DNA of 64,000 bases from Anaeramoeba ignava BMAN (taxonomy: Eukaryota > Protista > Anaeramoebae). Under the pieces are notes generated by a model. It was not told where the DNA came from. It did no database searches and worked only from the letters and a program-made list of their open reading frames with translations. The stretch is taken from positions 248,001 to 312,000 of the forward strand of contig JAPDFW010000072.1 of assembly GCA_028826165.1 (NCBI GenBank), given 5' to 3'. The translations under genes and the position numbers were made by a program. Below are positions 1-62,220 of the stretch, in pieces (within the stretch, counting starts at the first letter, position 1; every line of letters starts with the position of its first letter).

Positions 1-690
1 ATTTGAATTTGAATTTGAATTTGAATTTGAATTTGAATTTGAATTTGAATTTGAATTTGAATTTGAATTTGAATTTGAATTTGAATTTGAATTTGAATTT
101 GAATTTGAATTTGAATTTGAATTTGAATTTGAATTTTGAATTTTTGAATTTGAAATTTTGAATTTGGATTTGAATTTGAATTTGAATTTGATTTGAATTT
201 GGATTTGAATTTTATTTGAATTTGAAATTTAAATTTGAATTTGAATTTAAATTTGGAAATTTAAATTTGAATTTGAATTTGAATTTGAATTTAAATTTTT
301 TGAATTTGGAATTTGAAAAAATTTGATTTTAAATTTGAATTTGAATTTGAATTTGAATTTGAAATTAAATTTGAATTTGAATTTGAATTTGAATTTTGAA
401 TTTGAATTTGAAATTGAATTTGATTTTGAATTTGAATTTGAATTTGAATTTGAATTTGAATTTGAATTTGAATTTGGATTTGAATTTGAATTTGAATTTG
501 AATTTGAATTTGAATTTGAATTTGAATTTGAATTTGAATTTGAATTTGAATTTGAATTTGAATTGAATTTTTTGATTTTGAATTTGAATTTGATTTTGAA
601 TTTGATTTTGAATTTGAATTTGAATTTGAATTTGAATTTGAATTTGAATTTGGATTTGATTTGAATTTGAATTTAAATTTGAATTTAATT
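1..690. repeat. (TTTGAA)n microsatellite 3' of G-alpha-BTB copy 1
   Basis: Direct hexamer tandem repeat. The same satellite follows the stop codon of all three G-alpha-BTB copies. Confidence 0.95.
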
Positions 691-696
691 TGATAT

Positions 697-3299
697 TTAA
701 TTTGAATTTTTGAGTTCTTTTTTAACTAAATTTAATTTTTGTTTAAATAAAGAATATTCTGAAAATTGAAAAAATTCTTCAGCTTCTTCAAGTTCTTCAT
801 AAATATTCATTTCTAATCCTTTTTCAATTTCATCATAATATAAAAATTTAATTATTGTTTCAAGTGCTTTTGTTGATTTTCCTGTATAATCTTTAACTTC
901 ATTTGTTGAATCTTCAGTAACTGTTAAAAACATTCCTCGAAATAATTCACTTCTTGCTGCTAATATAAATTTATGTGCTTTGATCTTTTTTCCTTCATTT
1001 GATATAATTGAAAAATCTTTACTTTCTTCATTTGAATAAAGTGAAATTAAATCTGAAATAATTCTTTCTTTTGGTGTTGTTTTATTTTTATTTTGATTTT
1101 GATTTTGATTTTGATTTTTCATTTTCATTTTCATTTTCATTTTGATTTTTATTTTGATTTTGATTTTCATTTTGATTTTGATTTTGATTTTGATTTTGAT
1201 TTTGATTTTGATTTTCAATTTCATTTTGATTTTTATCAAATTCTGTTTTAATTCCTGAATAAATATCTTCTAATAATTTCATTCCTTCTTCTTTATTATG
1301 ATTAATTAGATATTCTTCTATTTTTTCATTTGTTCATTTCCAATTCTTTGTTCTATAAATAATGAATGAATTCCAATTTCTTGTGAATCATTTGTTTTAT
1401 ATATTTTATCACATAATTCTTGTTTTTTTAAAAAATTAATTAAATCAAAAATAACTCCATAAATTGAAAATTTATATAAATTTGATGCTTCTTTTCCAAA
1501 TTTTCTTTCTATTCCTGTTATTAAAATTTCTGTATTTTTGTTTTGTTTAAATTTGATAAATTAAATTAAATTAAATTAAATAAATTGATAAATAAAATAA
1601 AATAAATACCATTCCATAATTTATTTGAATCATATTCTTCAAGAAGATTTACATAATGAATTTGAATTTTCCTTTCTTGATTTTGATTTAAAGAAATAAA
1701 TCTTTTTTCAATATATTCTTTAATTTCATTTGGTTCATTTTTTCCTTTTTTTCCTTTTTGATTAAATTTTTTGATTAAATTTTTTTTAAACAAATAAATT
1801 TTGATTAAATTAAATTTTTGATTAAATTTTTGAACAAATTTTGGAATAAATTTTTGATTAAATTTTGGAATAAATTTTTGATTAAATTTTTGAACAAATT
1901 TTGGAATAAATTTTTGATTAAATTTTAGAATAAATTTTTGATTAAATTTTGGAATAAATTTTGGATTAAATTTTTGATTAAATTTTTGATTAAATTTTGG
2001 ATTAAATTTTGGAATAAATTTTGGATTAAATTTTTGATTAAATTTTTGAATTAAATTTTTGATTAAATTTTTGATTAAATTTTGGATTAAATTTTTGGAT
2101 TAAAATTTAAATAAATAAATACCATTATAATCTGGGAAATAATGATGAAAATTATTCTTTTCTAAATTTTTTAAAAATAAATCTAATTTTGTAAAAACTA
2201 AAATAAATGGAGTTTCACTAAACCATTGATAATTTATAATTTCATCAAATAATTCAATTGATTCTTGCATTTTATTAATTGATTCATCTGCATACGAATT
2301 TTGGTAATAACAACTCAAATCAACACAATGAATAATAACATCCATATTCTATTGATATTATTTATTTATATTATTTATTTATATTATTTTATCTATTTTG
2401 GATATTTTGATTTGTTTGCTTACTTCAAAATAGCGCATCCTAATTAACAAAAATTTTGTTTTTGATTATTAATTTAATTTATAAATTTTATTAATTAAAT
2501 TTGATTTACCATTTTCTTCTTTCACCTCTACTCCAAATATCACGGATTACGATTGGGAAATTTTGAATTTTTTTTTCATATACATTAATTCCAACTGTTT
2601 TTTGATAATATCTTAAAACATCTTCTTTTGTTGGTGAATAATTTGGTTGAAAAATTCTTTCAATTTCATTAAGTAAACTATTTTTTGAATTTGAATTTAA
2701 TTTTGAATTTGAATTTTGAAATTGATTTTGATTTTAAATTTGAATTTTGAAACAAAAATACTAAATTGATGATGGATCTAATATATCAGGTTTTTTTTGA
2801 TAAATTGATTGCATTTCTTCACTTTTCCATAATTTTGAAATTTTCTCAGGATTGATTTCTCGAGTTTCAATTAACTTTTTATAAATTTCCTTTTTGAAAA
2901 TAAATAATAAAATAAATTAATTTTTTTCTAATTAAATATTTGTAAATAATTTACTTGATTTTCTTCATTTTTAAATTGAATATTTTCATTTTCAGCAAAA
3001 TCAGTAAGTATACTAAGAGATAAATTTCGAATAATTTCAATATTTTCTTCTTTTTTAGATAAACAATATTCCATATCAAAAGTTTTAAATACTGTTGATT
3101 TTCCTGATCCTCTAATTCCTTTTTTGATTTAGAATTTAAATTTGAATTTGAATTAGAATTTTGTTTTTGTTTTTGTTTTTGTTTTTAGAAAATAACCTGA
3201 AATTAAAAATTTTAATTTTTTCGCATTTTCTTTTTCTTGTTCTTGTTCAATTTCTATTTGTTTTTCAATTTCTTTTGTTTTAGAATTTTTTGAACCCAT
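697..3299 (-). CDS. G-alpha-like GTPase fused to tandem BTB/POZ domains, copy 1 (8 exons; 1-nt frameshift in QN linker)
   Basis: Spliced translation: MGSKNS (myristoylation-type), G1 GIRGSGKST, YSPTKEDVLRYYQKTVG, DIWSRGERRKW, 16-nt exon 2424-2439 (MRYFE), FTKLDLF, then in frame a degenerate BTB (DLINFLKKQELCD..IGIHSLFIEQRI), (QN)n and a BTB (DFSIISNEGKKIKAHKFILAARSELFRGMF). All introns GT-AG. Confidence 0.85.
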
Positions 3300-3379
3300 T
3301 TATCTTTTTTTGGAACTTTTTTTATTGGAAAAAATGAAAAAATGAAAAAAAGAAAAATAAAAAATAAAAAGTGGAAAAG

Positions 3380-3915
3380 TTTTGATTTGAATTTGATTTT
3401 CAATTGATATTGAATTTGATATTGAATTTGAATTTAAATTTGTTTTTGATTTTGGATTTGAATTTGAATTTGGATTTGATTTTCAATTTGAATTTGAATT
3501 TGAATTTGAATTTGAATTTGAATTTGAATTTGAATTTGAATTTGAATTTGAATTTGAATTGGATTTGATTTTGAATTTGAATTTGAATTTGAATTTGAAT
3601 TTGGATTTGAATTTGAATTTGAATTTGAATTTGAATTTGAATTTGATTTTGAATTTGAATTTGAATTTGAATTTGAATTTGAATTTGAATTTGAATTTGA
3701 ATTTGAATTTGAATTTGAATTTGAATTTGAATTTGAATTTGAATTTGATTTTGATTTTGATTTTGAATTTGAATTTGATTTTCAATTTGAATTTGAATTT
3801 GAAATTAAATTTGGATTTGAATTTGAATTTGAATTTGAATTTGAATTTGAATTTGAATTTGAATTTGAATTTGAATTTGAATTTGAATTTGAATTTGAAT
3901 TTGAATTTAATTTGA
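3380..3915. repeat. (TTTGAA)n microsatellite 3' of G-alpha-BTB copy 2
   Basis: Hexamer tandem repeat. Confidence 0.9.
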
Positions 3916-3918
3916 TAT

Positions 3919-6453
3919 TTAATTTGAATTTTTGAGTTCTTTTTTAGCTAAATTTAATTTTTGTTTAAATAAAGAATATTCTGAAAATTGAAAAAATTCT
4001 TCAGCTTCTTCAAGTTCTTCATAAATATTCATTTCTAATCCTTTTTCAATTTCATCATAATATAAAAATTTAATTATCATTTCAAGTGCTTTTGTTGATT
4101 TTCCTGTATAATCTTTAACTTCATTTGTTGAATCTTCAGTAACTGTTAAAAACATTCCTCGAAATAATTCACTTCTTGCTGCTAATATAAATTTATGTGC
4201 TTTAATCTTTTTTCCTTCATTTGATATAATTGAAAAATCTTTACTTTCTTCATTTGAATAAAGTGAAATTAAATCTGAAATAATTCTTTCTTTTGGTGTT
4301 GTTTTATTTTGATTTTGATTTTTGATTTTGATTTTGATTTTTATCAAATTCTGTTTTATTTCCTGAATAAATATCTTCTAATAATTTCATTCCTTCTTCT
4401 TTATTATGATTAATTAGATATTCTTCTATTTTTTTCATTTGTTCATTTCCAATTCTTTGTTCTATAAATAATGAATGAATTCCAATTTCTTGTGAATCAT
4501 TTGTTTTATATATTTTATCACATAATTCTTGTTTTTTTAAAAAATTAATTAAATCAAAAATAACTCCATAAATTGAAAATTTATATAAATTTGATGCTTC
4601 TTTTCCAAATTTTCTTTCTATTCCTGTTATTAAAATTTCTGTATTTTTGTTTTGTTTAAATTTGATAATTAAATTAAATTAAATTAAATAAATAAATTGA
4701 TAAAATAAATAAATACCATTCCATAATTTATTTGAATCATATTCTTCAAGAAGATTTACATAATGAATTTGAATTTTCCTTTTCTTGGTTTTGATTTAAA
4801 GAAATAAATCTTTTTTCAATATATTCTTTAATTTCATTTGGTTCATTTTTTCCTTTTTTTTGAATTAAATTTTGGATTAGATTTTTGAATAAATTTTTGG
4901 ATTAAATTTTAATTAAATTTTTGGAATAAATTTTTGGATTAAATTTTTGAATAAATTTTGGATTAATTTTTGGATTAAATTTTTGAATTAAATTTTGGAA
5001 TTAATTTTGGATTAAATTTTGGATTAAATTTTTGGATTAAATTTTGAATTAAATTTTTGAATTAAATTTTGGATTAAATTTTTGATTAAATTTTGGATTA
5101 AATTTTTGGATTAAATTTTGAATTAAATTTTGGATTAAATTTTTGATTAAATTTTTGATTAAATTTTTGATTAAATTTTGGATTAAATTTTGGATTAAAT
5201 TTTTGGATTAATTTTTGAATTAAATTTTGGATTAAATAAATAAATAAATAAATACCATTATAATCTGGGAAATAATGATGAAAATTATTCTTTTCTAAAT
5301 TTTTTAAAAATAAATCTAATTTTGTAAAAACTAAAATAAATGAAGTTTCACTAAACCATCGAGAATTTACAATTTCATCAAATAATTCAATTGATTCTTT
5401 CATTTTATTAGTTGATTCATCTTCATATAAATTTTGATAATAACAATCCAAATCAACACAATAAATAATAACATTCACATTCTATTTATTTATTATTTAT
5501 ATTATTTATATTATTTATATTATTTATATTTAGAATGTTTACGTCAAAAGAATGTATCCTAATTAACAAAAATTTTGTTTTTGATTTATTAAATTAATTT
5601 ATAAATTTTATTAATTAAATTTGATTTACCATTTTCTCCTTTCACTTCTCATTCCTCCAACATCAAGAAGTGTAATTGGGAAATTTTGAATTTTTTTTTC
5701 ATATTCATTAATTCCTGTTGATTTCCTATAAAATCTTAAAACATCTTCTTTTGTTGGTGAATAATTTGGTTGATAAATTCTTCCAATTTCATTAAAAAAA
5801 CTATTTTTTGAATTTGAATTTAATTTTGATTTTGATTTTTAATTTGAAATTGAATTTAATTTTGAATTTTGATTTTAAATTTTGAATTTTGATTTTGATT
5901 TTGAAATTTAAATTTGATAAAAATACTAAATTGATGATTGATATAATATATCAGGTTTTCTTTGATAAATTGATTGAATTTCTTGAGTTTTCCATAATTT
6001 TTCAATTTCTCCAGGATTGATTTTTTCAGTTTCAATTAACTTTTTATAAATTTCCTTTTTTTTTAATAAATAATAAAATTAATATTTTTCTAATTAAATA
6101 TTTGTAAATAATTTACTTGATCAGCTTGACTTTTAAATTTAATATTTTCATTTCCAATAAAATCAATAAGCATTTTCAAAGGTAAATTTTGAATAATTTC
6201 AATATTTTCTTCTTTTTGAGATAAACAATATTCCATATCAAAAGTTTTAAATATTGTTGATTTTCCTGTTGTTCCAGCACCTTTTTTGATTTAGAATTAA
6301 ATTTAAATTTAATTTATATTTTATTTTTTATTTTTTATTTTTGAAATAACCTAAAATTAAAATTTTTAGTTTTGATTGTTGATTTTCATAATTTATTGGT
6401 ATTGATGGATAAGGATCAATTCTTCTATCTCTTTTTGAACTTTTAACTCCCAT
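3919..6453 (-). CDS. G-alpha-BTB fusion, copy 2 (two 1-nt homopolymer frameshifts near 4780 and 4320)
   Basis: MGVKSS start, G1 GAGTTGKST, DVLRFYRKSTG, DVGGMRSERRKW, 16-nt exon 5543-5558 (IHSFD), TKLD. BTB part nearly identical to copies 1 and 3. Confidence 0.85.
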
Positions 6454-6614
6454 TTTTTGTTATAAAAAAATAAAGAAAAAAATGAAAAAAATGAAAAAAA
6501 GAAAAAAAGAAAAAGCAAAAAATAATTTTTCTTTCTTTTCATATTCATTTTTTATCAACAATTTTCTGATCTAAAACTATTTTTTTTTTTGCTTTTTTTT
6601 TTTAAAAGATTTTA

Positions 6615-7304
6615 ATGAATTTTGTTCTTGCTTGGTTTCTTATTTTATTGATCATTATTTTAGAAGTTGCTATAACAGGATTTCTTGCAGAAAAATTCAA
6701 AGTGAGACAAATAATTACAAGAAAATTAAACCATATTTTCATTGGTCCAACTTATATATTACTTTGGAAATTATATCCACAAGATATCGATATAAAATGG
6801 AAGATATTAATTTCTTCAATTCCATTCATCTTCTCAATTTATTATGCATTAATTGGATTGGGAATTGCGAAAAATGAGAAACTTGTTCAAACAATTTCTC
6901 GAAAAGGAGATCCAAAAGAATTTCTTTATGGTCCTTTTTATTATGGAATTATTCATACTTTACTTGCTATTTTTTTCTTCCAAAAAAGAGCTGCTGTTTT
7001 TGCTGTTTGTGCTTTATGTTTTGGAGATGGATCTGCAGAATTATTTGGAAGACTTTTTGGAAACAAGAAACTATTTTGGAGTCCTAAAAAATCATATGCT
7101 GGTTCATTTGCAATGGTTGTTACAACTTTTCTTACTTCAATTCTAATTCTCTTTTTATATGATTTTTCTGTTACTTTTCTTGATCTCTTTAAAATTGTTT
7201 TGGTATCTATTGCTTGTAGTTTTGTTGAATCTCTTCCTTATGATAATATCGATAATATTTCAATTACTTCAACAGCAATAATTTTTGCAACAATTTTATT
7301 TTGA
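6615..7304 (+). CDS. Phytol/farnesol kinase-like membrane protein (CTP-dependent prenol kinase, VTE5/FOLK-like)
   Basis: RKLNHIFIG, SRKGDPKEFLYGPFYYG, GDGSAELFGRLFG..KSYAGS, DNI motifs; multiple TM segments; intronless. Confidence 0.8.
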   Translation: MNFVLAWFLILLIIILEVAITGFLAEKFKVRQIITRKLNHIFIGPTYILLWKLYPQDIDIKWKILISSIPFIFSIYYALIGLGIAKNEKLVQTISRKGDPKEFLYGPFYYGIIHTLLAIFFFQKRAAVFAVCALCFGDGSAELFGRLFGNKKLFWSPKKSYAGSFAMVVTTFLTSILILFLYDFSVTFLDLFKIVLVSIACSFVESLPYDNIDNISITSTAIIFATILF

Positions 7305-7451
7305 AAAAGAAAAACAAATCGAAAAACAAATTGACGATTCAAAATTAAAAAACAAATTCAAGTCTCAAACAAAATAAAACAAACAAAATCTTTTTAATTT
7401 TTACTTTTTACTTTTTATTTTTTCTTTTTTCTTTTCCCAATTAATTTCATA

Positions 7452-10146
7452 ATGACTTTCTTTAAAAAACTTATTTTTTGCTTTTTCTTCTCCTTTTTGC
7501 TAATTTCCAATTCTTTTTGCCAATATAATGAAATTATTCAAGAACTTTCAGAAAAAATATCAAGTTTACAAGTTAAAAACGATACAAAATTTAATTTCCC
7601 ATTTGAATATCAAAAACCAAAAGGAATTTATGAAACTTGGATTCATTTAAATTTTCATGGGAATCTTTTCTCGCAATTATTAAGAAATAATGTAAATTTC
7701 CCCTTTTTTCTTTTATTCAAAACTTAAAACAAAAACTAAAATTAAAAAAATCTTTAATTAGTTCAAAGTTTTTGATGAAAATGGTTTTGTTACTGCTTGG
7801 GTTTGATTTTCTTTTTCTTTTTCTTTTTCTTTTCTAATTAATTTCCAAATTATTTTTTTCTCAAATTTTATCAAAAATTAGATCAATGAAATTCTTTTAG
7901 AATCAAATAAAGTAAAAAATATAATAAATTCCAAAAAAAAGGAAACAAACAAATATATCATTTCTTTTTATTAATTTATCCAAAAAAATCAAATTGAAAA
8001 GATTGGAACTATTCAACTTGATAAAGATCAATTATTGAATTCAATTAAATTGGAAACAAAATTCGTTGATAAAACTGTAGATGATCCAATTATTGTTTAT
8101 TGGATTCAAGAAATGAAAGATGATCATTATGTAACTCAACATCCCAATCTTGTTGGAACAGTCGAAAAATTAAAACAATGGTCAGGAGAAACTTATCATC
8201 TTTTAAATTCTCTTGGTTTGAAAGGATTAGCTGAAAAAATTGGAAGATTACACAAAAAACTCCAAAAAGAAGAACTTCATCTTCAAATTCCAGCAGTAAT
8301 ATTAAGATAAAATTAATATATCAATCCAAAATATTCTGCAAAAAAATAATTTAATAATATTCAAAACTCTTGTATTCAAATTATTTAAAAAAGGATGCAG
8401 ATGATACTTCAGTTAATCTTGCAATGGGTTGTTTATTATATGAAAACAAAGATAAATTTCCTGATTCTTTTGATACTTGGTGGGATGCTAATAAAAACAT
8501 TTCTGGAATAATGAAATATTTCCTTAAATATGCTTATTATCCCTTAAGTGATGATAAAAATCTGAATTCCATTGATCCAAGATCTTATTATTTTATGCAT
8601 GAATTTTTAGAAAGTGGAATTGTGAAAGAAAAAGATTTTGGAATAGTTACAACTTGGTTTTTGAATAGAAATGAATATAAAGAAAATTATCCATATAGAA
8701 TGATGAGATACAATATAAATAGTGTTGATGCAAGTGTTTGCTCTAATTTTATTTATGGATTATCACAACTTTCTGTGAGTAAATTAATTCCTTTGACTGA
8801 ATGGATGTCAGATGAAATCAAAAAGTTGTATCTTGATACTTCAATTTTTGTTGATTGGACAATTAAATCTGGAAGATTAGTTGAAAGACCTGATCTTGGG
8901 AGCCTTTATTATCCACCAATTTATGCAATGTAAATCATTTCCATTTTTTCTTCCTTATTTTTTCTCTTATATTTGAATTAATTCGAAATGAATAAAAAAT
9001 AGGTATTGGTTTACTTCAAGAACTCTTTCTCTTTTTTCAGGAAATTCCTTTCCAGATCCAGTTTTTGAAACTGTTTATAGTATGTTATTAAAAACAATGC
9101 AAAATGAAGCAACAAAACACATTTTAGAATCAGCTCAAGAAGATGATAATTATGTTTGGTGGGATGATTTTCTTGGTATTTTTTCCTTTTTCCTTTTTGG
9201 AAATTTTTGATTCAAATTAATTAAAATTGGAAATTTGAAAATTTTAGGAGTAAATGATACATATTTTAATGGAAAATATGTTAATAATGCTGAAGATAGA
9301 ATATTCACAACCTCAAGTAATTTCCAAAATTTTTAATATAATTGATTTTGATTTTGAATTTGAATTTTGATTTTGAATTTGAATTTTGATTTTGAATTTA
9401 ATTTTGATTTTGATTTTGATTTTGATTTTTGATTTTGAATTTAATTTTAATTTTGAATTTGAATTTGAATTTGAATTGATTTTGATTTTAATTTTGAATT
9501 TGAATTTAATTTTGATTTTAATTTTGAATTTGAATTTGAATTTGATTTTGAATTTGAATTTTAATTTTGATTTTTATTTTTATTTTAATTTGATTAGTGG
9601 CAATAAATACATTAATTGATACTTGGACAATCAGAAAAAATTATAAATATTCATGGAGAAAAGAAACTCCAGATCATATTAAAAAAATTATTGAAAAAGG
9701 AATAAATTGGTTAGTTAAATATTCACTTTCTTCCAAATTTAAACCAGAAAATTCTTTCTTCTCTATAACTGTGAAATCAGAAGAAAGTTTCCCTTTTTAC
9801 TTTCCAGCAACATTTATTGAATTTGTAAATGGAACAACTGGTAAATAATTAATTTCATAAAAAATATTCAAAAATATTGAAAATAAACTGAAAAATAGTT
9901 TCACCAAATTCTTCACCAAGCATTATAAGTTTTGAATTAACACCAGCAATGGAAGGTATTGTAAGTAAAGAAGAATATAATCATATGGTTTATGATGAAA
10001 TGCATTTCCAATCACGAACTCCAACTCATTTTAGTGGATTTAATCTTAGACCATTTTTTTCTTGGTCAAGTCCAGCATTTACTTATTCGTCAACTTTATT
10101 TGCAATTTCTAAATATTCAAGTCTTATTGAAAAAGAAAACAAATAA
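7452..10146 (+). CDS. Multi-exon secreted protein of unknown function with DxDDT motif
   Basis: Signal-peptide-like N-terminus. GT-AG exons include 7762-7800 (FKVFDENGFVTAW), 7882-7911 and 8002-8295; splicing to 8394 gives IPADADDTSVNLAMG. Further exons run to the stop at 10146. Confidence 0.7.
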
Positions 10147-10324
10147 TTAATCATTTTTCACTTATTTTTTTTTTTGGAAAATAATCCAAAGATCCAAAAA
10201 ATCAGAAAAAACTATAAATCAAAACTTTTTCTTTTCATTCTCTTTTTTTTTTTTTTTTGGAAATCTGAGAAAAAAATAATTCCACAATTTAATCAAATAA
10301 AATGAAATATTTCTTTCATTTTAT

Positions 10325-10630
10325 GAATTGAATTTGAATTTGAATTTGGATTTGAATTTGAAATTAAATTTGATTTTCAATTTGATTTTGAATTTGAATT
10401 TGATTTTGGATTTTGATTTTCGAATTTGATTTTGAATTTGAATTTGATATTTAATTTGAATTTGATTTTGAATTTGAATTTGAATTTGAATTTGAATTTG
10501 AATTTGAATTTGAATTTGAATTTGAATTTGATTTTGAATTTGATTTTGAATTTGAATTTGAATTTGAATTTGAATTTGAATTTAAATTTGAATTTGATTT
10601 TGAATTTAAATTTGAATTTGAATTTGATAT
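10325..10630. repeat. (TTTGAA)n microsatellite 3' of G-alpha-BTB copy 3
   Basis: Hexamer tandem repeat. Confidence 0.9.
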
Positions 10631-13600
10631 TTAATTTGAATTTTTGAGTTCTTTTTTAACTAAATTTAATTTTTGTTTAAATAAAGAATATTCTGAAAAT
10701 TGAAAAAATTCTTCAGCTTCTTCAAGTTCTTCATAAATATTCATTTCTAATCCTTTTTCAATTTCATCATAATATAAAAATTTAATTATTGTTTCAAGTG
10801 CTTTTGTTGATTTTCCTGTATAATCTTTAACTTCATTTGTTGAATCTTCAGTAACTGTTAAAAACATTCCTCGAAATAATTCACTTCTTGCTGCTAATAT
10901 AAATTTATGTGCTTTAATCTTTTTTCCTTCATTTGATATAATTGAAAAATCTTTACTTTCTTCATTTGAATAAAGTGAAATTAAATCTGAAATAATTCTT
11001 TCTTTTGGTGTTGTTTTATTTTCATTTTCATTTTGATTTTCATTTTGATTTTGATTTTGATTTTGATTTTCAATTTGATTTTGATTTATATTTTGATTTT
11101 GGTTTTGATTTTGATTTTCAATTTGATTTTGATTTTGATTTTGATTTTGATTTTGATTTTGATTTTGATTTTGATTTTGATTTTGATTTTGATTTTGATT
11201 TTGATTTTCAATTTGATTTTGATTTTGATTTTGATTTTGATTTTGATTTTGATTTTGATTTATATTTTGATTTTGATTTTGATTTTGATTTTGATTTTGA
11301 TTTTCAATTTGATTTTGATTTTGATTTTGATTTTGATTTTGATTTTGATTTTGATTTATATTTTGATTTTGATTTTGATTTTGATTTTGATTTTGATTTT
11401 GATTTTGATTTTTATTTCGATTTTCATTTTGATTTTCATTTTGATTCTGATTTTCATTTTGATTTTCATTTTGATTCTGATTTTCATTTTTATCAAATTC
11501 TGTTTTAATTCCTGAATAAATATCTTCTAATAATTTCATTCCTTCTTCTTTATTATGATTAATTAGATATTCTTCTAATTTTTTCATTTGTTCATTTCCA
11601 ATTATTTGTTTTATAAATAATGAATGAATTCCAATTTCTTGTGAATCATTTGTTTTATATATTTTATCACATAATTCTTGTTTTTTTAAAAAATTAATTA
11701 AATCAAAAATAACTCCATAAATTGAAAATTTATATAAATTTGATGCTTCTTTTCCAAATTTTCTTTCTATTCCTGTTATTAAAATTTCTGTATTTTGTTT
11801 TATTTAAATTTGATAATTAAATTAAATTAAATTAAATAAATAAATTGATAAAATAAATAAAATAAATAAATAAATACCATTCCATAATTTATTTGAATCA
11901 TATTCTTCAAGAAGATTTACATAATGAATTTGAATTTTCCTTTCTTGGTTTTGATTTAAAGAAATAAATCTTTTTTCAATATATTCTTTAATTTCATTTG
12001 GTTCATTTTTTCCTTTTTTTTGAATTAAATTTTGGATTAAATTTTGAATTAAAATTTGGATTAAATTTTGGATTAAATTTTTGATTAAATTTTGAATTAA
12101 ATTTTGGATTAAATTTTGGATTAAATTTTTGGATTAAATTTTTGATTAAATTTTTGGATTAAATTTTGGATTAAATTTTGGATTAAATTTTGATTAAATT
12201 TTGGAATAAATTTTTGGATTAAATTTTGGAATAAATTTTGATTAAATTTTAAATAATAAATACCATTATAATCTGGGAAATAATGATGAAAATTATTCTT
12301 TTCTAAATTTTTTAAAAATAAATCTAATTTTGTAAAAACTAAAATAAATGAACTTTGTTCAAACCATCGAGAATTTATAATTTCTTCAAATAATTCAATT
12401 GATTCTTGCATTTTATTAATTGATTCATCTTCATATAAATTTTGATAATAACAATCCAAATCAACACAATAAATAATAGCACTCACATTCTATTTATTTA
12501 TTTATATTATTTAATTTATCTATTTTGGATATTTTAATTTATTTGTTTACGTCCAAATAGCGTATCCTAATAAAAAAAATTTGGTTTTTGATTATTAAAT
12601 TAATTTGTAAATTTTATTATTTAAATTTGATTTACCATTTTCTTCTTGGAGTTCCACTTCCGAAATCAAGAAGTGTAATTGGGAAATTTTGAATTTTTTT
12701 TTCATATATATTAATTCCAAATGTTTTTTGATAATATCTTAAAACATCTTCTTTTGTTGGTGAATAATTTGGTTGAAAAATTCTTTCAATTTCATTAAGT
12801 AAACTATTTTTTGAATTTGGATTTGATTTTGAATTTGGATTTTGATTTTGAATTTGAATTTTGAATTTGATTTTGATTTTGATTTTGAATTTGAATTTGA
12901 ATTTTGAATTTTAAATTTTGAATTTGAATTTTGAATTTTGATTTTGAAACAAAAATACTAAATTGATGATGGATCTAATATATCAGGTTTTTTTTGATAA
13001 ATTGATTGAATTTCTTCACTTTTCCATAATTTTGAAATTTTCTCAGGATTGATTTCTCGAGTTTCAATTAACTTTTTATAAATTTCCTTTTTGAAAATAA
13101 ATAATAAAATAAATTAATTTTTTTGTAATTAAATATTTGTAAATAATTTACTTGATTTTCTTCATTTTTAAATTGAATATTTTCATTTTCAGCAAAATCA
13201 ATAAGTATACTAAAAGATAAATTTCGAATAATTTCAATATTTTCTTCTTTTTTAGATAAACAATATTCCATATCAAAAGTTTTAAATATTGTTGATTTTC
13301 CTGATCCTCTAATTCCTTTTTTGATTTAGAATTTAAATTTGATTTTGATTTTGAAATTGAATTTGATTTTGATTTTGAATTTGAATTTGATTTTGAATTT
13401 GAATTTGAATTTGAATTTTGAATTTGATTTTGATTTTGAATTTTGATTTTGAATTTGATTTTGATTTTAAATTTGATTTTGAGTTTAAATTTGATTTTGA
13501 ATTGATTTTGAAATTGAATTTGAATTTTGATTTTGAATTTGAATTTAAATTTGAAATTGAAATTGATTTTAAATTTGAATTTGAATTTGATTTTGATTTT

Positions 13601-13778
13601 GATTTTGAATTTGAATTTGAATTTGATTTTGAATTGAGTTTGAATTTGTTTTTGATTTTGATTTTAGAAAATAACCTAAAATTAAAAATTTTAATTTTTT
13701 CGCATTTTCTTTTTCTTTTTCTTTTTCAATTTCTAATTGTTTTTCAATTTCTTTTGTTTTAGAATTTTTTGAACCCAT
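10631..13778 (-). CDS. G-alpha-BTB fusion, copy 3 (QN linker in frame)
   Basis: MGSKNS, GIRGSGKST, DVLRYYQKTFG, DFGSGTPRRKW, 16-nt exon 12551-12566 (IRYLD), TKLD. The last exon reads through a QN linker of about 160 aa into the BTB (ORF 10631-11587). Confidence 0.88.
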
Positions 13779-13885: not shown

Positions 13886-15881
13886 TCAATGCTTTTTCAA
13901 TTTTGGAATACCATAATCTTTCATTAACATAATTTTTGGAACAGTCATTTCATGCATAGCAGCTCTTATACCTTCACTACCCATACCTGAGTCCTTTATA
14001 CCTCCATAAACTTGAGCATCAACACGAGCAGAAGGAATATCATTAATAACAACACCTCCACATTCAACATTTTCATAAAATGAAAAGGCTCTTTTGAGAT
14101 TGTTTGTGTATAATCCTGCTTGCAATCCATATCTTGATTTATTAATTTTTGTTATCACTCCTTTCATGTTAGAAAATTTTTCAATATAAAAAACTGGACC
14201 AAAAACTTCATTTTGAGCAATTATGGAATTTTGATGAATTTTTTCTAAAATTGTTGGAAGATAAAAATTATTGATTCTTTGTCCTCCAACAAGAACTTTT
14301 GCTTTCTTTTCTTTTGCATTTTCAACCCAAGATTCAACTCTTTTAGCTTCATCAGTACTAATTAAAGGTCCAACATTCCATTCAAGTGGATTTTCATCTG
14401 GAAGCATTGGATCAACTGTTTTTAATAATTTTGTGAAATGAATCAATCTTTCTTTTAATTTATTATAAACTGTATCATGAAGATAAACTCTTTGAACAGA
14501 GATACAACTTTGGCCTGCTTGATAAAATGCACCGAAAATTATTCTTTTAGCGATTGTATCAAGATCGGTTTCAGCACAGTTGCATTTATCAACTACACAT
14601 GCTGCATCACCTCCTAATTCAAGTGTAACTTTTTTTTTTCCTGATAATGATTTGATTTTCCAACCAACAACATCACTTCCTATAAGATTATTTTTTTAAT
14701 TTTGATTTTGAATTTAATTTTAAATTTGATTTTGATTTTGATTTTAATTTTAATTTTGATTTTGATTTTGATTTTGATTTTAATTTTAATTTTGATTTTG
14801 ATTTTGATTTTGATTTTAATTTTAATTTTGAATTTGATTTTTGATTTTGATTTTGATTTTGATTTTGATTTTGATTTTAATTTTGATTTTAATTTTAATT
14901 TTGATTTTTATTTTGATTTTGATTTTAATTTTGATTTTGATTTTGATTTTGATTTTGATTTTGAATTTTAATTTTGATTTTGATTTTGATTTTGATTTTG
15001 ATTTTGATTTTGATTTTGATTTTGATTTTGATTTTAATTTTGATTTTGATTTTGATTTTGATTTTGATTTTGATTTTGATTTTGATTTTGATTTTGATTT
15101 TGAATTTTAATTTTGAATTTTGATTTTGATTTTTGAATTTGATTTTGATTTTGATTTTAATTTTAAAATTACCTGTAAAAGAAACCATTTTCATTCTATC
15201 ATCCTTAAGTAATTCCATTGCCAAATTATTTTCCATTGGAAGAACAGAAAAAGAATTTTTTGGAAGAGCAGTATTAGCCAAAATATCACCCAAAACAATA
15301 GCAGAAATAGGAGTACGTGGAGAAGGTTTGATAATAAAAGGATTACCAGTTGCAATAGCAGGAGCAATTTTATGAACAATTAAATTAATAGGAAAATTAA
15401 AAGGGGAAAACATAGCAATTGGTCCAATAGGGAATCTTCTTGTTGTTCCTTGATATCCTTGAGAGGACTTTGTGTATCCAAAATCTTGATATTCACCGTA
15501 ATTACGACCAGCTTCTTCACTGCAATTTTCAACTGTATCAATTGCTCTATTCATTTCAACTTGTGATATTTTTATTGGTTTTCCACTTTCCATTGTGATT
15601 AATGATGCAAGTTCATCTTTCCTTTCTCGAAATTGTTTTGCAATATCTCGCAATATATCTTTTCTTGCATGAATCGGTAAATCATTCATTGCTTTTCGAC
15701 TTTTGGAAACCGTTGTAATTGCTTCTTGTATTTCTTTTTTTTCTGCTAATGAAACTCTTGCTATTTTTTTCTCAGTGAATTTGTCAAAAACATCAAGGAA
15801 TTTATTAGTCATAACTTGCTTTCCTGCTATATAAAGTGGATATACTTCTTTTTTTATTGTTTGTTTTCTAATCAAATCCAT
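13886..15881 (-). CDS. NAD(P)-dependent aldehyde dehydrogenase, ALDH family 21/RNP123-like; one intron 14680-15172
   Basis: PFNFP, KPS, FTG|S across the splice, TLELGGDAA, GAFYQAGQSCISVQR (catalytic Cys), EVFGP, YGLQAG, YGGIKDSGMGSEG. Confidence 0.92.
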
Positions 15882-59582: not shown

Positions 59583-61687
59583 TTAATTGGAATTTTGATT
59601 TTGATTGGAATTTTGATTATCTAAATTTTCACATTTTCTCAATTCATTATATTTTGAATCTTCAAGTTCTTTTTCAGCAAAATCTCTATCTTTTTGAATA
59701 GCTTGAAGTAATTCATCTAAAAAAAAATGGAACAAAAGAATTAAAGAAAAAAAATTAAATTAAAATTTTTTGATTATTTATTTACCAATTGAAGAAAATT
59801 TAATCAAAGGACGAATATAACCACAAATTATTAGAGATAAATGTTCATTATAAAAATCTTGATTAAATTCATGTAAAAGATGTGCTTCAACAGTTTTGAT
59901 TTTATTTTCAAAAGAAGGATTACATCCAATTGTCATAACCATTTTAAAAATTCCAAATTTATTCAATTTTGCAAATCCAAAAAAAACTCCTGTTGAAAGT
60001 TTTTGAAAATCTTCTGAATATTCAAGATTTGCTGATTAAAAAAAACAATAAATATAATTATAAATTTAATTATTAATTTAATTATAAATATAATTATAAA
60101 TATAATTATAAATTTAATTATAAATTTAATTATAAATTTAATTATAAATTTAATTATAAATATAATTATAAATTTAATTATAAATTTAATTATAAATATA
60201 ATTATAAATTTAATTATAAATTTAATTATAAATATAATTATAAATTTAATTATAAATTTAATTATAAATATAATTATTAATTCAATTATAAATATAATAA
60301 ATTTAATTTTAATTATAAATTTAATTATAAATATAATTATAAATATAATTATTAATTCAATTATAAATATAATTATAAATTTAATTATAAATATAATTAT
60401 AAATTTAATTATAAATATAATTATAAATTTAATTATAAATTTAATTATAAATTTAATTATAAATTTAATTATAAATATAATTATAAATTTAATTATAAAT
60501 TTAATTATAAATATAATTATAAATTTAATTATAAATTTAATTATTAATTTAATTATAAATTTAATTATAAATTTAATTATAAATTTAATTATTAATTTAA
60601 TTATTAATATAATTATAAATTTAATTATAAATTTAATTATAAATTTAATTATAAATTTAATTATAAATTTAATTATAAATTTAATTATAAATATAATTAT
60701 AAATTTAATTATAAATTTAATTATAAATTTAATTATAAATTTAATTATAAATTTAATTATAAATTTAATTATAAATTTAATTATAAATTTAATTATAAAT
60801 TTAATTATAAATTTAATTATAAATTTAATTATAAATTTAATTATAAATTTAATTATAAATTTAATTATAAATTTAATTATAAATTTAATTATAAATTTAA
60901 TTATTAATTTAATTATTAATATAATTATAAATTTAATATAAAAATATAAATATAAATAATTATAAATATAATTATAAATATAATTATAAATTATAAATTC
61001 AATTATAAATATAATTATAAATTTAATTATAAATTTAATTATAAATTTAATTATAAATTTAATTATAAAATATAATTATAAATTTAATTATAAATTTAAT
61101 TATAAATATAATTATAAATTTAATTATAAATTTAATTATAAATTTTATTATAAATTTAATTATAAATATAATTATAAATTTAATTATAAATATAATTATA
61201 AATTTAATTATAAAAAATTTAATTATTAATTTAATTATAAATTTAATTATAAATATAATTATAAATTTAATTATAAATTTAATTATAAATTTAATTATAA
61301 ATTTAATTATAAATTTAATTATAAATTTAATTATAAATTTAATTATAAATTTAATTATAAATTTAATTATAAATTTAATTATAAATTTAATTATAAATTT
61401 AATTATAAATTTAATTATAAATTTAATTATAAATTTAATTATAAATTTAATTATAAATTTAATTATAAATTTAATTATAAATATAATTATAAATTTAATT
61501 ATAAATATAATTATTAATATAATTATTAATTTAATTATTAATATATTTATTAATTTAATAAATAAATACCAGTTGGAAACCCTATTTTTTTTCCTCTTCC
61601 AAATCCATGAATAACTTTTCCTTGTAAAATAAAAGGTTTTTCAATTAAATTTAATTTATTATTATCAATTTCATCATTTTTATTCAT
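59583..61687 (-). CDS. RFK: Riboflavin kinase; exons 61570-61687, 59786-60031, 59583-59716
   Basis: GKVIHGFGRGKKIGFPT|AN across the splice, TGVFFGFA, MVMTIGCNPSF, TVEAHLLHEFNQDFY, GYIRP, DELLQAIQKD. Confidence 0.93.
60050..61560. repeat. 12-bp satellite (AATTATAAATTT)n filling RFK intron 1
   Basis: About 1.5 kb of near-perfect 12-mers. Confidence 0.95.
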
Positions 61688-61829
61688 TTTTATTTTATTT
61701 TTAAAAAAGAAATAAAAGAAAAAAATGAAAAATGAAAAAATTCAAAAAATAACCAAAAAATCAACAAATTTAATTTTCAAAAGAATTTTATTTAAAATTT
61801 TAATCAAAATAAATAATTCTAATTAAAAT

Positions 61830-62220
61830 AATTCCTTTTTTAATCAAAAATTAAAACAAATATGGAAAAAGAAAAATTCAATTCATCAAGGAAAATAATT
61901 AATAATTGATTAAAAGATAAAATAATTCCTTTTTTAATCAATTATTAAAACAGAAAATCTAATTATTGAAAAAATTCAATTCATCAAGGAAAATAATTAA
62001 TACTTGATTAAAAGATAAAATATCTCCTTTTTTAATCAATTATTAAAACAGAAAATCTAATTATTGAAAAAATTCAATTCATCAAGGAAAGTAATTAATA
62101 ATTGATTAAAAGATAAAATATCTCCTTTTTTAATCAATTATTAAGTTAAAAATAAAGGAATAGAAAAGCAGAGAAATTTTCAATTCATCAAGGAAAATAA
62201 TTAATAAATAAAAGATAAAA
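61830..62220. repeat. ~98-bp tandem repeat (3-4 units) with internal hairpin
   Basis: TTCATCAAGG recurs at 61882, 61980, 62078 and 62184; 17-bp inverted arms at 61899-61915 and 61932-61948. Confidence 0.8.

What the first reader, a model, noticed from the sequence alone, without database searches (positions are those of the whole stretch)
697..13778. Heterotrimeric G-alpha domain fused to tandem BTB domains (three paralogs)
Seen: after the G-alpha core, the region of the receptor-binding alpha5 helix splices in frame (WN|EILITG) into a degenerate BTB, a QN linker and a canonical BTB. Copy 3 has an unbroken last exon. Known: BTB domains are Cullin-3 adaptors, and RhoBTB has the analogous GTPase+2xBTB layout with a Rho domain. 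G-alpha normally needs a free C-terminus for GPCR coupling. Inference: a G-alpha-based counterpart of RhoBTB, a myristoylated Cul3 adaptor that could ubiquitylate G-alpha interactors. I do not recognise this architecture from characterised proteins.
Basis: partly seen in the sequence, partly recalled or inferred. Interest (0 to 1): 0.8.

Follow-up and report, generated by a model that had tools for sequence, protein, structure and literature searches.

The report
G-alpha fused to double BTB cassette
In the anaerobic amoeba Anaeramoeba ignava, a small gene family joins a catalytically crippled heterotrimeric G-protein alpha subunit to a tandem BTB module of the kind that docks proteins onto cullin-3 ubiquitin ligases, a domain combination found in no other organism searched, although only one of the three copies in this window is intact.

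Summary
The window is Anaeramoeba ignava contig C73. It carries three minus-strand paralogs, each with eight GT-AG exons. Seven exons encode a G-alpha-like domain. The last exon continues helix alpha5 in frame (WN|EILITG) into a divergent BTB1, a QN-rich linker and a canonical BTB2.

- **Integrity:** only copy 3 has an intact ORF (698 aa). Copies 1 and 2 each carry two single-base A-run frameshifts, which could be real or errors of the Nanopore-based assembly.
- **Recent history:** the 3' 1.2 kb, intron and flank included, is 97-100% identical between copies, so it was recently homogenised. The G-alpha exons differ with dN/dS about 1.2-1.5.
- **Catalysis:** the Arg finger and the Gln are lost, NKxD reads TKLD, and the P-loop is kept.
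- **Older paralogs:** two deeply diverged genes elsewhere in the genome (P0009, P0132) share the architecture and the intron position, so the fusion is old.
- **Rarity:** among the 150 best hits of an exhaustive HMMER search of 1.84 billion proteins, only those two A. ignava proteins combine G-alpha with BTB. No paper describing the combination was found.

The same BTB-BTB cassette has more than 2,000 candidate loci in this genome. A cullin-3 ortholog exists and BTB2 keeps a phi-x-E motif, but Cul3 binding, GTP binding and transcription remain untested. Earlier scan notes (s1-695402, s1-695312) reached similar readings.

The parts
10631..13778 (-). Copy 3: the only intact G-alpha-BTB1-QN-BTB2 gene in the window. 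Eight exons: 13778-13676, 13315-13152, 13086-12959, 12803-12636, 12566-12551, 12489-12264, 12012-11878, 11787-10631. 698 aa.
   Evidence: Boundaries transferred from public model P0001 and all GT-AG. The joined CDS is 2097 nt with one terminal stop.
11878..13778 (-). Copy 3 G-alpha-like part (exons 1-7). It has an MGSKNSK N-terminus and the P-loop GIRGSGKST. Switch I reads LRYYQKTFGI (Arg finger replaced by Tyr), switch II reads DFGS-GTPRRKW (no Gln), G4 reads TKLD and G5 reads VNLL.
   Evidence: Pfam PF00503 on the exons. Motif alignment. The near-identical copy 1 protein P0001 folds as a G-alpha (pLDDT 88.8) and matches Gi/Gt/Gq structures at target-normalised TM 0.74-0.80.
12551..12566 (-). 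16-nt micro-exon (exon 5) encoding the IRYLD/MRYFE/IHSFD stretch of switch II/alpha2. It is conserved in all three copies (copy 1 at 2424-2439, copy 2 at 5543-5558).
11788..11877 (-). Intron 7 (90 nt, GT..AG), which splits helix alpha5 at WN|EILITG. This is the junction between the G-alpha part and the BTB exon.
   Evidence: The same position is an intron in P0009, P0132 and canonical G-alpha genes of this genome.
11504..11722 (-). BTB1 of copy 3. It is a divergent, truncated BTB with B1, B2 and two to three helices. It lacks the A2-B3 loop that carries the phi-x-E position, and it lacks the last helices.
   Evidence: hhalign of BTB1 against BTB2, probability 97.3%. Alignment A1 has invariant E43, D46, H60, Y96 and G98. 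In the AF2 model the 10-residue block means for residues 31-100 are 90-98 pLDDT.
11018..11491 (-). QN-rich low-complexity linker, about 158 aa in copy 3, about 45 aa in copy 1 and about 10 aa in copy 2.
   Evidence: pLDDT in the model is low to medium.
10694..10975 (-). BTB2 of copy 3. It is a canonical BTB/POZ domain with V-T-E at the phi-x-E position (MFLTVTEDS). The protein ends after helix A5 and has no BACK/3-box.
   Evidence: Pfam 5e-13. Foldseek top hits are KLHL26, KBTBD2 and SPOP BTB domains. The profile against PDB gives KBTBD4, KBTBD2 and SPOP.
1318..3299 (-). Copy 1 as annotated publicly (P0001, 386 aa). Exons: 3299-3197, 3118-2955, 2889-2762, 2677-2510, 2439-2424, 2348-2123, 1753-1610, 1529-1318. 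It ends at TAG inside BTB1.
   Evidence: Exact spliced mapping of P0001.
700..1333 (-). Copy 1 remainder of the last exon: the rest of BTB1, a QN stretch and an intact BTB2 open frame (1269-700). It is out of reach of the annotated ORF. The A run at 1321-1326 is one base short, and the A run at 1115-1119 is one base long.
3919..6453 (-). Copy 2. Exons: 6453-6351, 6280-6117, 6054-5927, 5800-5630, 5558-5543, 5481-5256, 4852-4717, 4638-3919. It has the least degenerate G motifs (GAGTTGKST, DVGGMRSERRKW) but is broken by a +1 shift at 4780-4783 (exon 7) and a +1 shift at 4319-4323 (QN repeat).

Best explanation
This is a real, lineage-specific gene family of Anaeramoeba ignava. A G-alpha-like domain is joined, through the ancestral intron in helix alpha5, to the genome's standard double-BTB cassette.

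Shown:
- The G domain keeps the G-alpha fold, the P-loop, a [T/S]KxD G4 motif and an N-terminal myristoylation-type motif.
- It has lost the catalytic Gln (all five family members) and the Arg finger (the window copies).
- Its alpha5 tail is buried in a fusion.

Inferred:
- It cannot couple to receptors in the canonical way or switch itself off by hydrolysis.
- It most likely serves as the recognition or regulatory head of a RhoBTB-like cullin-3 substrate adaptor. BTB2, and possibly BTB1, would dimerise and dock on Cul3, while the membrane-anchored G-alpha-like head brings G-protein partners (G-beta-gamma, RGS proteins, effectors) or itself to the ligase.
- The fusion probably arose once, when the short terminal alpha5 exon was extended or replaced by a BTB-BTB cassette exon. 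It then diverged deeply (P0009/P0132 against the window clade).

Within this window the family is a young tandem array. Its 3' halves were recently homogenised and its G domains are drifting or diversifying. Only copy 3 is intact in the assembly.
For: Architecture and splicing.

G-alpha fold. Motif states.

BTB1 homology. BTB2 fold and nearest solved relatives are Cul3 adaptors, with V-T-E at the phi-x-E position.

A Cul3 ortholog, P0281, is present.

The same cassette follows Ras-like, ankyrin, RCC1 and Kelch heads. It has more than 2187 candidate loci.

Five G-alpha-BTB loci exist: the three window copies, C73:396.5-400.1 kb and C6:9.4-12.3 kb. They fall on one side of a branch among 20 other A. 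ignava G-alphas, with support 71/90. They share the derived motifs TKxD/SKxD and VNL and the loss of Gln, whereas the other paralogs keep DVGGQ, NKxD and TCA.

Canonical paralogs have the same alpha5 intron followed by a 15-18-codon terminal exon, for example DAVQSTILENILKEQGFM-stop.

About 50 RGS-domain loci and about 40 G-alpha loci show an expanded G-protein system that the family could act on.
Against: - No transcript evidence could be obtained. The runs offered held only 21-31-base junk matches.
- The Cul3 complex prediction gave no verdict.
- There is no 3-box/BACK after BTB2, and BTB1 lacks the phi-x-E loop.
- Between the window copies, dN/dS in G-alpha exons 1-6 is 1.2-1.5, and exon divergence is about equal to intron divergence.
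- Switch II is badly degenerate in copies 1 and 3.
- Copies 1 and 2 are frameshifted.
- The near-identity of the BTB halves extends into the intron and the 3' flank, so it says nothing about selection.
- G-gamma was not detected, although that search was uninformative. G-beta was not tested.
- The monophyly support is only moderate and the branches are long.
Confidence: 0.55

Rival explanations
1. The three window copies are a decaying tandem array: recent duplicates of a G-alpha-BTB gene that are losing function. Copy 3 would simply be the copy not yet broken. Only the older paralogs P0009 and P0132 would be working genes.
For: - There are four frameshifts in copies 1 and 2.
- dN/dS is 1.2-1.5 and exon divergence is similar to intron divergence.
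- DxxG and the catalytic residues are lost in copies 1 and 3, whereas P0009 and P0132 keep the Arg finger, the Thr and DVGG.
- BTB1 is truncated and replaced by a QN tract whose length varies from about 10 to about 158 aa.
Against: - Copy 3 keeps a 698-aa ORF across eight exons, with every splice site and a 16-nt micro-exon intact.
- All frameshifts are single-base A-run length changes within or near stretches 97-100% identical between copies. The assembly was Nanopore-based and polished with Racon, Nanopolish and Pilon, so they may be assembly errors.
- dN/dS above 1 is also what diversifying recognition domains show.
Confidence: 0.25
2. The fusion is functional but independent of Cul3. The BTB domains would act only as dimerisation or oligomerisation modules that cluster a permanently 'on' or nucleotide-free G-alpha-like domain at membranes, for example to sequester G-beta-gamma or RGS proteins.
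For: - No BACK/3-box follows BTB2, and the Cul3 docking prediction fell below the mark (not evidence either way).
- Many BTB proteins do not bind Cul3. PMC9976452 notes this for some KCTDs and describes scavenging of G-beta-gamma without degradation.
- The N-terminus carries a myristoylation-type motif.
Against: - The nearest solved relatives of BTB2 are bona fide Cul3 adaptors, and V-T-E sits at the phi-x-E position.
- The cassette is shared with RCC1, ankyrin, Kelch and Ras-like heads that mirror the known Cul3 adaptor classes RCBTB/IBTK, ABTB, LZTR1 and RhoBTB.
Confidence: 0.12
3. The fusion is an annotation artefact. The G-alpha gene and the BTB exon would be separate transcription units that only look joined.
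For: - No RNA evidence was obtainable here.
- Stand-alone BTB-BTB ORFs exist near other G-alpha genes. L033 has a 228-aa ORF with its own ATG 2.8 kb downstream of one. L046 has a cassette on the opposite strand.
Against: - Exon 7 has no stop and ends mid-alpha5 at a GT donor. Read-through into the intron gives junk and then a stop.
- The BTB exon has no in-frame ATG before the BTB1 core.
- The junction sits at the intron that all G-alpha genes of this genome use before their last exon.
- Three independent, deeply diverged loci keep the same in-frame arrangement.
- The public models P0001 and P0009 use the junction.
Confidence: 0.03

Closest known systems
RhoBTB1/2/3 (atypical Rho GTPases; Cul3 adaptors)
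   Same: - An N-terminal GTPase-type domain with atypical or no hydrolysis is followed by two BTB domains.
- The first BTB is divergent and carries or abuts an insertion.
- The adaptor role and autoinhibition by a GTPase-BTB1 contact are described in PMC4931677.
- RhoBTB clusters are the nearest named neighbours of P0009 by language-model features, score 0.78, which is a lead only.
   Different: - The GTPase is a heterotrimeric G-alpha with its helical domain, not a Rho domain.
- There is no proline-rich linker and no C-terminal BACK-like region.
- In RhoBTB it is BTB1 that binds Cul3. Here BTB1 lacks the phi-x-E loop and BTB2 is the canonical domain.
- The fusion is an independent origin inside a genome-wide cassette family.
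KCTD2/KCTD5/KCTD17-Cul3 ligases that ubiquitinate G-beta-gamma
   Same: A BTB-domain Cul3 adaptor acts directly on heterotrimeric G-protein subunits to tune GPCR/cAMP signalling (PMC9976452). This is the known precedent for the proposed logic.
   Different: - KCTDs use a T1-type BTB and a separate C-terminal domain to bind G-beta-gamma.
- They contain no G-alpha domain.
- No homology beyond the BTB fold is implied.
The A. ignava double-BTB cassette families (RCC1-BTB-BTB, ankyrin-BTB-BTB, Kelch-BTB-BTB, Ras-like-BTB-BTB such as P0005)
   Same: They share the same roughly 240-aa BTB1-BTB2 tail, with 30-50% identity and conserved RSELFRGMF and YSG motifs. The tail is often on its own exon of about 215-265 codons.
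   Different: The head domain is a G-alpha. Only five such loci were found, against more than 2,000 candidate cassette loci. The window copies replace the end of BTB1 with a QN tract.
Canonical heterotrimeric G-alpha subunits (Gi/Gt/Gq) and atypical G-alpha-like proteins such as plant XLGs (from my own knowledge)
   Same: Ras-like plus helical-domain fold, the P-loop, an N-terminal helix and the MG start. XLGs likewise lack key catalytic residues (from my own knowledge, not tested here).
   Different: - The Arg finger and Gln are lost, TCAT reads VNLL, and the C-terminus is not free.
- XLGs carry their extension at the N-terminus and have no BTB.

Membership tests
Heterotrimeric G-protein alpha subunit (Pfam PF00503) | Ras-like GTPase domain with an inserted all-helical domain and an N-terminal helix | tested here: met
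   Pfam hits on the exons. The P0001 model (pLDDT 88.8) matches Gi, Gt and Gq chains over 310-346 residues at target-normalised TM 0.74-0.80.
Heterotrimeric G-protein alpha subunit (Pfam PF00503) | Catalytic Arg (switch I) and Gln (switch II, DVGGQ) for GTP hydrolysis | tested here: not met
   The Arg is replaced by Tyr in copies 1-3. DVGGQ reads DFGS-G, DIWS-R and DVGGM. P0009 and P0132 keep the Arg but have DVGGA. Twenty other A. ignava paralogs were examined; the 11 whose fetched stretch covers switch II all keep DVGGQ.
Heterotrimeric G-protein alpha subunit (Pfam PF00503) | Guanine-nucleotide binding motifs G1 (GxxxxGKS/T), G4 (NKxD) and G5 (TCA) | tested here: inconclusive
   G1 is kept. 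G4 reads TKLD, which is within the general [NT]KxD consensus (from my own knowledge). G5 reads VNL. Binding itself was not assayed.
Heterotrimeric G-protein alpha subunit (Pfam PF00503) | Free C-terminal end of alpha5 for insertion into an activated GPCR | tested here: not met
   Alpha5 continues without a stop into a linker helix and BTB1. Canonical paralogs end 15-18 residues after the same intron.
BTB/POZ domain (Pfam PF00651) | BTB core fold B1-B2-A1-A2-B3-A3-A4-A5 | tested here: met
   BTB2 meets it: Pfam 5e-13, all elements present in the AF2 model, and Foldseek matches to KLHL26, SPOP and KBTBD2. BTB1 is homologous but partial.
Cul3 substrate adaptor (BTB-Cul3 class) | phi-x-E motif in the A2-B3 region that contacts Cul3 | tested here: met
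   V-T-E in MFLTVTEDS corresponds to L-K-E of KBTBD4. HMMER aligns the BTB2 family profile to KBTBD4, and copy 3's residues are placed by their positions in that family alignment. P0009 and P0132 have V-x-D.
Cul3 substrate adaptor (BTB-Cul3 class) | 3-box/BACK helices after the BTB that strengthen Cul3 binding | tested here: not met
   The protein ends after helix A5 of BTB2.
Cul3 substrate adaptor (BTB-Cul3 class) | Physical binding to the Cul3 N-terminal domain | tested here: inconclusive
   The Cul3 ortholog P0281 was identified. The complex prediction scored 0.22 against a mark of 0.34, which is no verdict.
RhoBTB subfamily | Rho-family GTPase domain, proline-rich linker, bipartite BTB1, BTB2 and a C-terminal BACK-like region | tested here: not met
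   The GTPase is a G-alpha. There is no proline-rich linker or BACK. Only the GTPase plus two-BTB layout is shared.

The most novel reading that the evidence does not exclude
The G-alpha-like head is a nucleotide-state-locked decoy. It would still bind G-beta-gamma, RGS proteins or receptors at the membrane and deliver them to a cullin-3 ligase. That would be a built-in degradative off-switch for G-protein signalling carried on a G-alpha scaffold, with the rapidly diverging window copies tuning partner specificity.
Probability: 0.2. Interest if true: 0.8.

Novelty: new variant of a known kind. Interest (0 to 1): 0.55.

Why it matters
G-alpha subunits are among the most architecturally conservative signalling proteins, and their free alpha5 tail is central to receptor coupling. 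A family that welds this tail to a ubiquitin-ligase adaptor module would be a natural example of G-protein machinery repurposed for targeted degradation. It would be a G-alpha counterpart of RhoBTB and a fused version of the KCTD5-Cul3-G-beta-gamma logic. It also shows how a mass-produced BTB-BTB exon can capture new recognition heads through a pre-existing intron. The practical value is limited by the obscure, hard-to-manipulate host and by the uncertain integrity of two of the three copies.

Tried and rejected
- **Dictyostelid origin.** I guessed this from the AT-rich QN repeats and searched the literature. It was rejected when the word search gave 97% identity to an A. ignava protein.
- **RNA evidence.** The look-up of sequencing runs offered two runs holding 5% of the words. 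Read laying showed only 21-31-base matches and non-canonical 'joints', so this was not A. ignava RNA and gives no information.
- **Complex prediction.** Cul3 residues 1-230 with BTB2 scored 0.22, below the mark. This is no verdict and is not used as evidence.
- **The look-up of encoding contigs for P0001.** Nothing is on record.
- **Word search with P0009.** It found no further G-alpha-BTB proteins.
- **Copy 3's public protein model.** It could not be looked for. At 698 aa it falls outside the length window of the exon query, and the joined model was not sent to any search, fold or complex tool. Searches were made exon by exon by reference, or with the public model P0001. Exons were joined only inside local scripts for translation, alignment, dN/dS and the tree.
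- **G-gamma (PF00631) search of the genome.** Nothing rang anywhere, so it is uninformative. G-beta was not searched, because no specific model or session sequence was available.
- **Many G-alphas with large C-terminal fusions.** I suspected this from the 'open_frame_aa' column. I dropped it because that column does not match the real ORFs at the window copies.
- **BTB cassettes near two other G-alpha genes.** L033 is a separate ORF with its own ATG and has an opposite-strand ORF between it and the G-alpha gene. L046 lies on the opposite strand. Neither is a fusion.
- **Top multi-stretch hits of the exhaustive search.** These are tandem G-alpha or extended G-alpha proteins without BTB.

Full report
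**Identity of the sequence.** The window is extremely AT-rich (12-27% G+C per 2 kb). I first took it for a dictyostelid. The word search with the last exon of copy 3 instead returned a 97%-identical Anaeramoeba ignava protein, followed by hundreds of A. ignava BTB proteins. The genome tool places the window at C73:248001-312000 of a 42.8-Mb, 147-contig assembly. That assembly was made from Nanopore reads polished with Racon, Nanopolish and Pilon. RNA-seq was mapped to the assembly for binning contigs; the passages I read do not describe how genes were predicted (PMC11550330).

**The observation.** Three paralogs lie on the minus strand.
- Pfam finds G-alpha on the exons and BTB on the last exon.
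- The public protein P0001 (386 aa, 'gtp-binding protein alpha subunit') is copy 1. It maps exactly onto eight exons, all GT-AG, including a 16-nt micro-exon and the junction ...NKLWN|EILITG....
- The same boundaries exist in copies 2 and 3.
- Joined locally, copy 3 gives 2097 nt, 698 aa and one terminal stop. The joined model was used only inside scripts. Every database, fold and complex query used single exons by reference or public models.

**The G-alpha half.**
- An AlphaFold model of P0001 built on a 63-sequence alignment is confident (pLDDT 88.8). It matches Gi, Gt and Gq structures over 310-346 residues at target-normalised TM 0.74-0.80, including the helical domain and the N-terminal helix.
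- The P-loop is kept (GIRGSGKST, GAGTTGKST).
- The switch I arginine finger is Tyr in all three copies.
- DVGGQ has become DFGS-G (copy 3), DIWS-R (copy 1) and DVGGM (copy 2).
- NKxD reads TKLD and TCAT reads VNLL.
- Alpha5 (residues 308-327 of the model) runs straight into a second helix and then BTB1. The tail that canonical G-alphas insert into receptors is therefore not free.
- The N-terminus MGSKNSK fits the MGxxxS myristoylation pattern (from my own knowledge).

**The BTB half.**
- BTB2 is canonical: Pfam 5e-13, a full B1-A5 core in the model, and Foldseek top hits KLHL26, KBTBD2 and SPOP.
- Its profile finds the Cul3 adaptors KBTBD4, KBTBD2, SPOP and KLHL3 in the PDB. In that profile alignment the family position matching L-K-E of KBTBD4 (the phi-x-E position) is V-T-E in copy 3.
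A 13-sequence alignment of the tail shows invariant E43, D46, H60, Y96 and G98. Pfam BTB reaches 22.5 bits on the BTB1 of P0132. The BTB1 profile aligns to the BTB2 profile at 97.3% probability, E 2e-11.
- BTB1 lacks the A2-B3 loop. In the window copies its last helices are replaced by a QN tract of about 158, 45 or 10 residues.
- There is no BACK/3-box.

**Integrity and recent history.**
- From exon 7 to beyond the stop, intron 7 and the 3' flank included, the three copies are 97-100% identical. This is recent gene conversion or duplication, not evidence of constraint.
- Copy 1 has an A run one base short (1321-1326), which creates the TAG that ends P0001, and an A run one base long (1115-1119).
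- Copy 2 has an extra A in exon 7 (4780-4783) and another in the QN repeat (4319-4323).
- All four sit in A homopolymers, within or near the stretch that is 97-100% identical between copies. That is where a polished Nanopore assembly is least reliable, so I cannot tell mutation from error.
- In exons 1-6, dN/dS between copies is 1.2-1.5, and exon divergence is close to intron divergence. There is no purifying selection on the G domain within this array. It is either relaxed or diversifying.

**The wider family.**
- The genome holds roughly 40 G-alpha loci and about 50 RGS-domain loci.
- Two further genes have the same architecture. P0009 is 584 aa at C73:396.5-400.1 kb, and its last exon starts at residue 340 at the same alpha5 position. 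P0132 is at C6, and its public model is N-terminally truncated although the locus encodes the full G domain.
- Both keep the Arg finger and DVGG but have Ala for the catalytic Gln.
- I scanned 3 kb downstream of 39 other G-alpha loci and found no more fusions.
- In a tree of the C-terminal half, the five genes fall on one side of a branch (71/90, long branches). Two subclades are well supported.
- The five share [T/S]KxD, VNL and loss of Gln, whereas 20 other paralogs keep NKxD and TCA-type motifs, and those whose stretch covers switch II keep DVGGQ.
- Those canonical paralogs have an intron at the same place in alpha5, followed by a 15-18-codon terminal exon such as DAVQSTILENILKEQGFM-stop.
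- The simplest history is a single old event in which that terminal exon was extended into, or replaced by, a BTB-BTB cassette exon.

**The cassette.** The tail is not special to these genes. The same BTB1-BTB2 module follows Ras-like (P0005), ankyrin, RCC1 and Kelch heads. It has more than 2,187 first-look candidates in the genome, many in their own open frame of about 215-265 codons. These head types mirror the known Cul3 adaptor classes RhoBTB, ABTB, RCBTB/IBTK and LZTR1 (from my own knowledge). A Cul3 ortholog exists (P0281, 736 aa; best PDB match Cullin-3) alongside Cul1/2-like and Cul4-like genes.

**Rarity.** An exhaustive HMMER search of 1.84 billion cluster representatives with P0009 listed only P0009 and P0132 as G-alpha plus BTB among the best 150. 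The other high or multi-stretch hits are G-alpha only, or BTB cassettes on other heads. A weaker combination scoring under about 114 bits would have been missed. ESM-Atlas features point to RhoBTB clusters and to plain G-alpha, not to a combined family. Full-text searches found no description.

**Mechanism.**
- Shown: the architecture, the fold, the motif states, the age of the fusion, and the presence of Cul3.
- Inferred: the protein cannot couple to receptors through alpha5 and cannot hydrolyse GTP. By analogy with RhoBTB (PMC4931677) and with KCTD5-Cul3 acting on G-beta-gamma (PMC9976452), it most likely acts as a Cul3 adaptor or regulator whose head recognises G-protein partners.
- Untested: transcription, Cul3 binding, nucleotide binding and the partners themselves.

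**Verdict.** This is a genuine and unusual domain fusion, a new variant of the GTPase-BTB-BTB adaptor theme. In this window it is represented by one intact gene and two broken or mis-assembled copies.

Noticed in passing
L017, L016, L012, L015 (downstream of canonical G-alpha genes); L049-L068: Canonical A. ignava G-alpha genes all seem to carry an intron in the middle of helix alpha5, followed by a tiny terminal exon of about 15-18 codons, for example DAVQSTILENILKEQGFM-stop. The G-alpha-BTB genes use the same intron.
   Followed up: partly
L048 (G000:C6:7000-13000), minus strand: The public model P0132 (KAJ5080666.1, 365 aa) is N-terminally truncated. The locus also encodes an MGNSYRD start, the P-loop GTGSSGKST, helical-domain exons and a switch exon with NFRVKTTGI and DVGGARNERK.
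   Followed up: partly
L033 (G000:C13:564500-568500), 514-1200 minus strand: A stand-alone 228-aa BTB1-BTB2 ORF with its own ATG lies 2.8 kb downstream of a canonical G-alpha gene, with an opposite-strand ORF between them. This is the kind of neighbourhood from which a fusion could arise.
   Followed up: partly
whole genome G000: More than 2,187 first-look candidates for the BTB-BTB cassette were found in 42.8 Mb, along with about 40 G-alpha loci, about 50 RGS-domain loci and about nine cullin loci, several of them Cul4-like.
   Followed up: partly
window 12551-12566, 5543-5558, 2424-2439: A 16-nt micro-exon is conserved in all three copies and included in the public model of copy 1. It may indicate that RNA evidence shaped that model, but the gene-prediction method was not checked.
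   Followed up: no
P0133 (2766 aa, source not looked up): This protein has about ten G-alpha matches in tandem. It is the third-best hit of the exhaustive search.
   Followed up: no
window 13886-15881, minus strand: Two ORFs look by eye like halves of an aldehyde dehydrogenase, separated by a K/I/N-rich low-complexity stretch or intron. This was not tested.
   Followed up: no
window 1-664, 3404-3915, 9386-9619, 10426-10647, 14702-15110, 60001-62000: Intergenic spacers are long AAATTC-type microsatellites that read as (NL)n, (KI)n or (FE)n in every frame. G+C falls to 4% at 60-62 kb.
   Followed up: no
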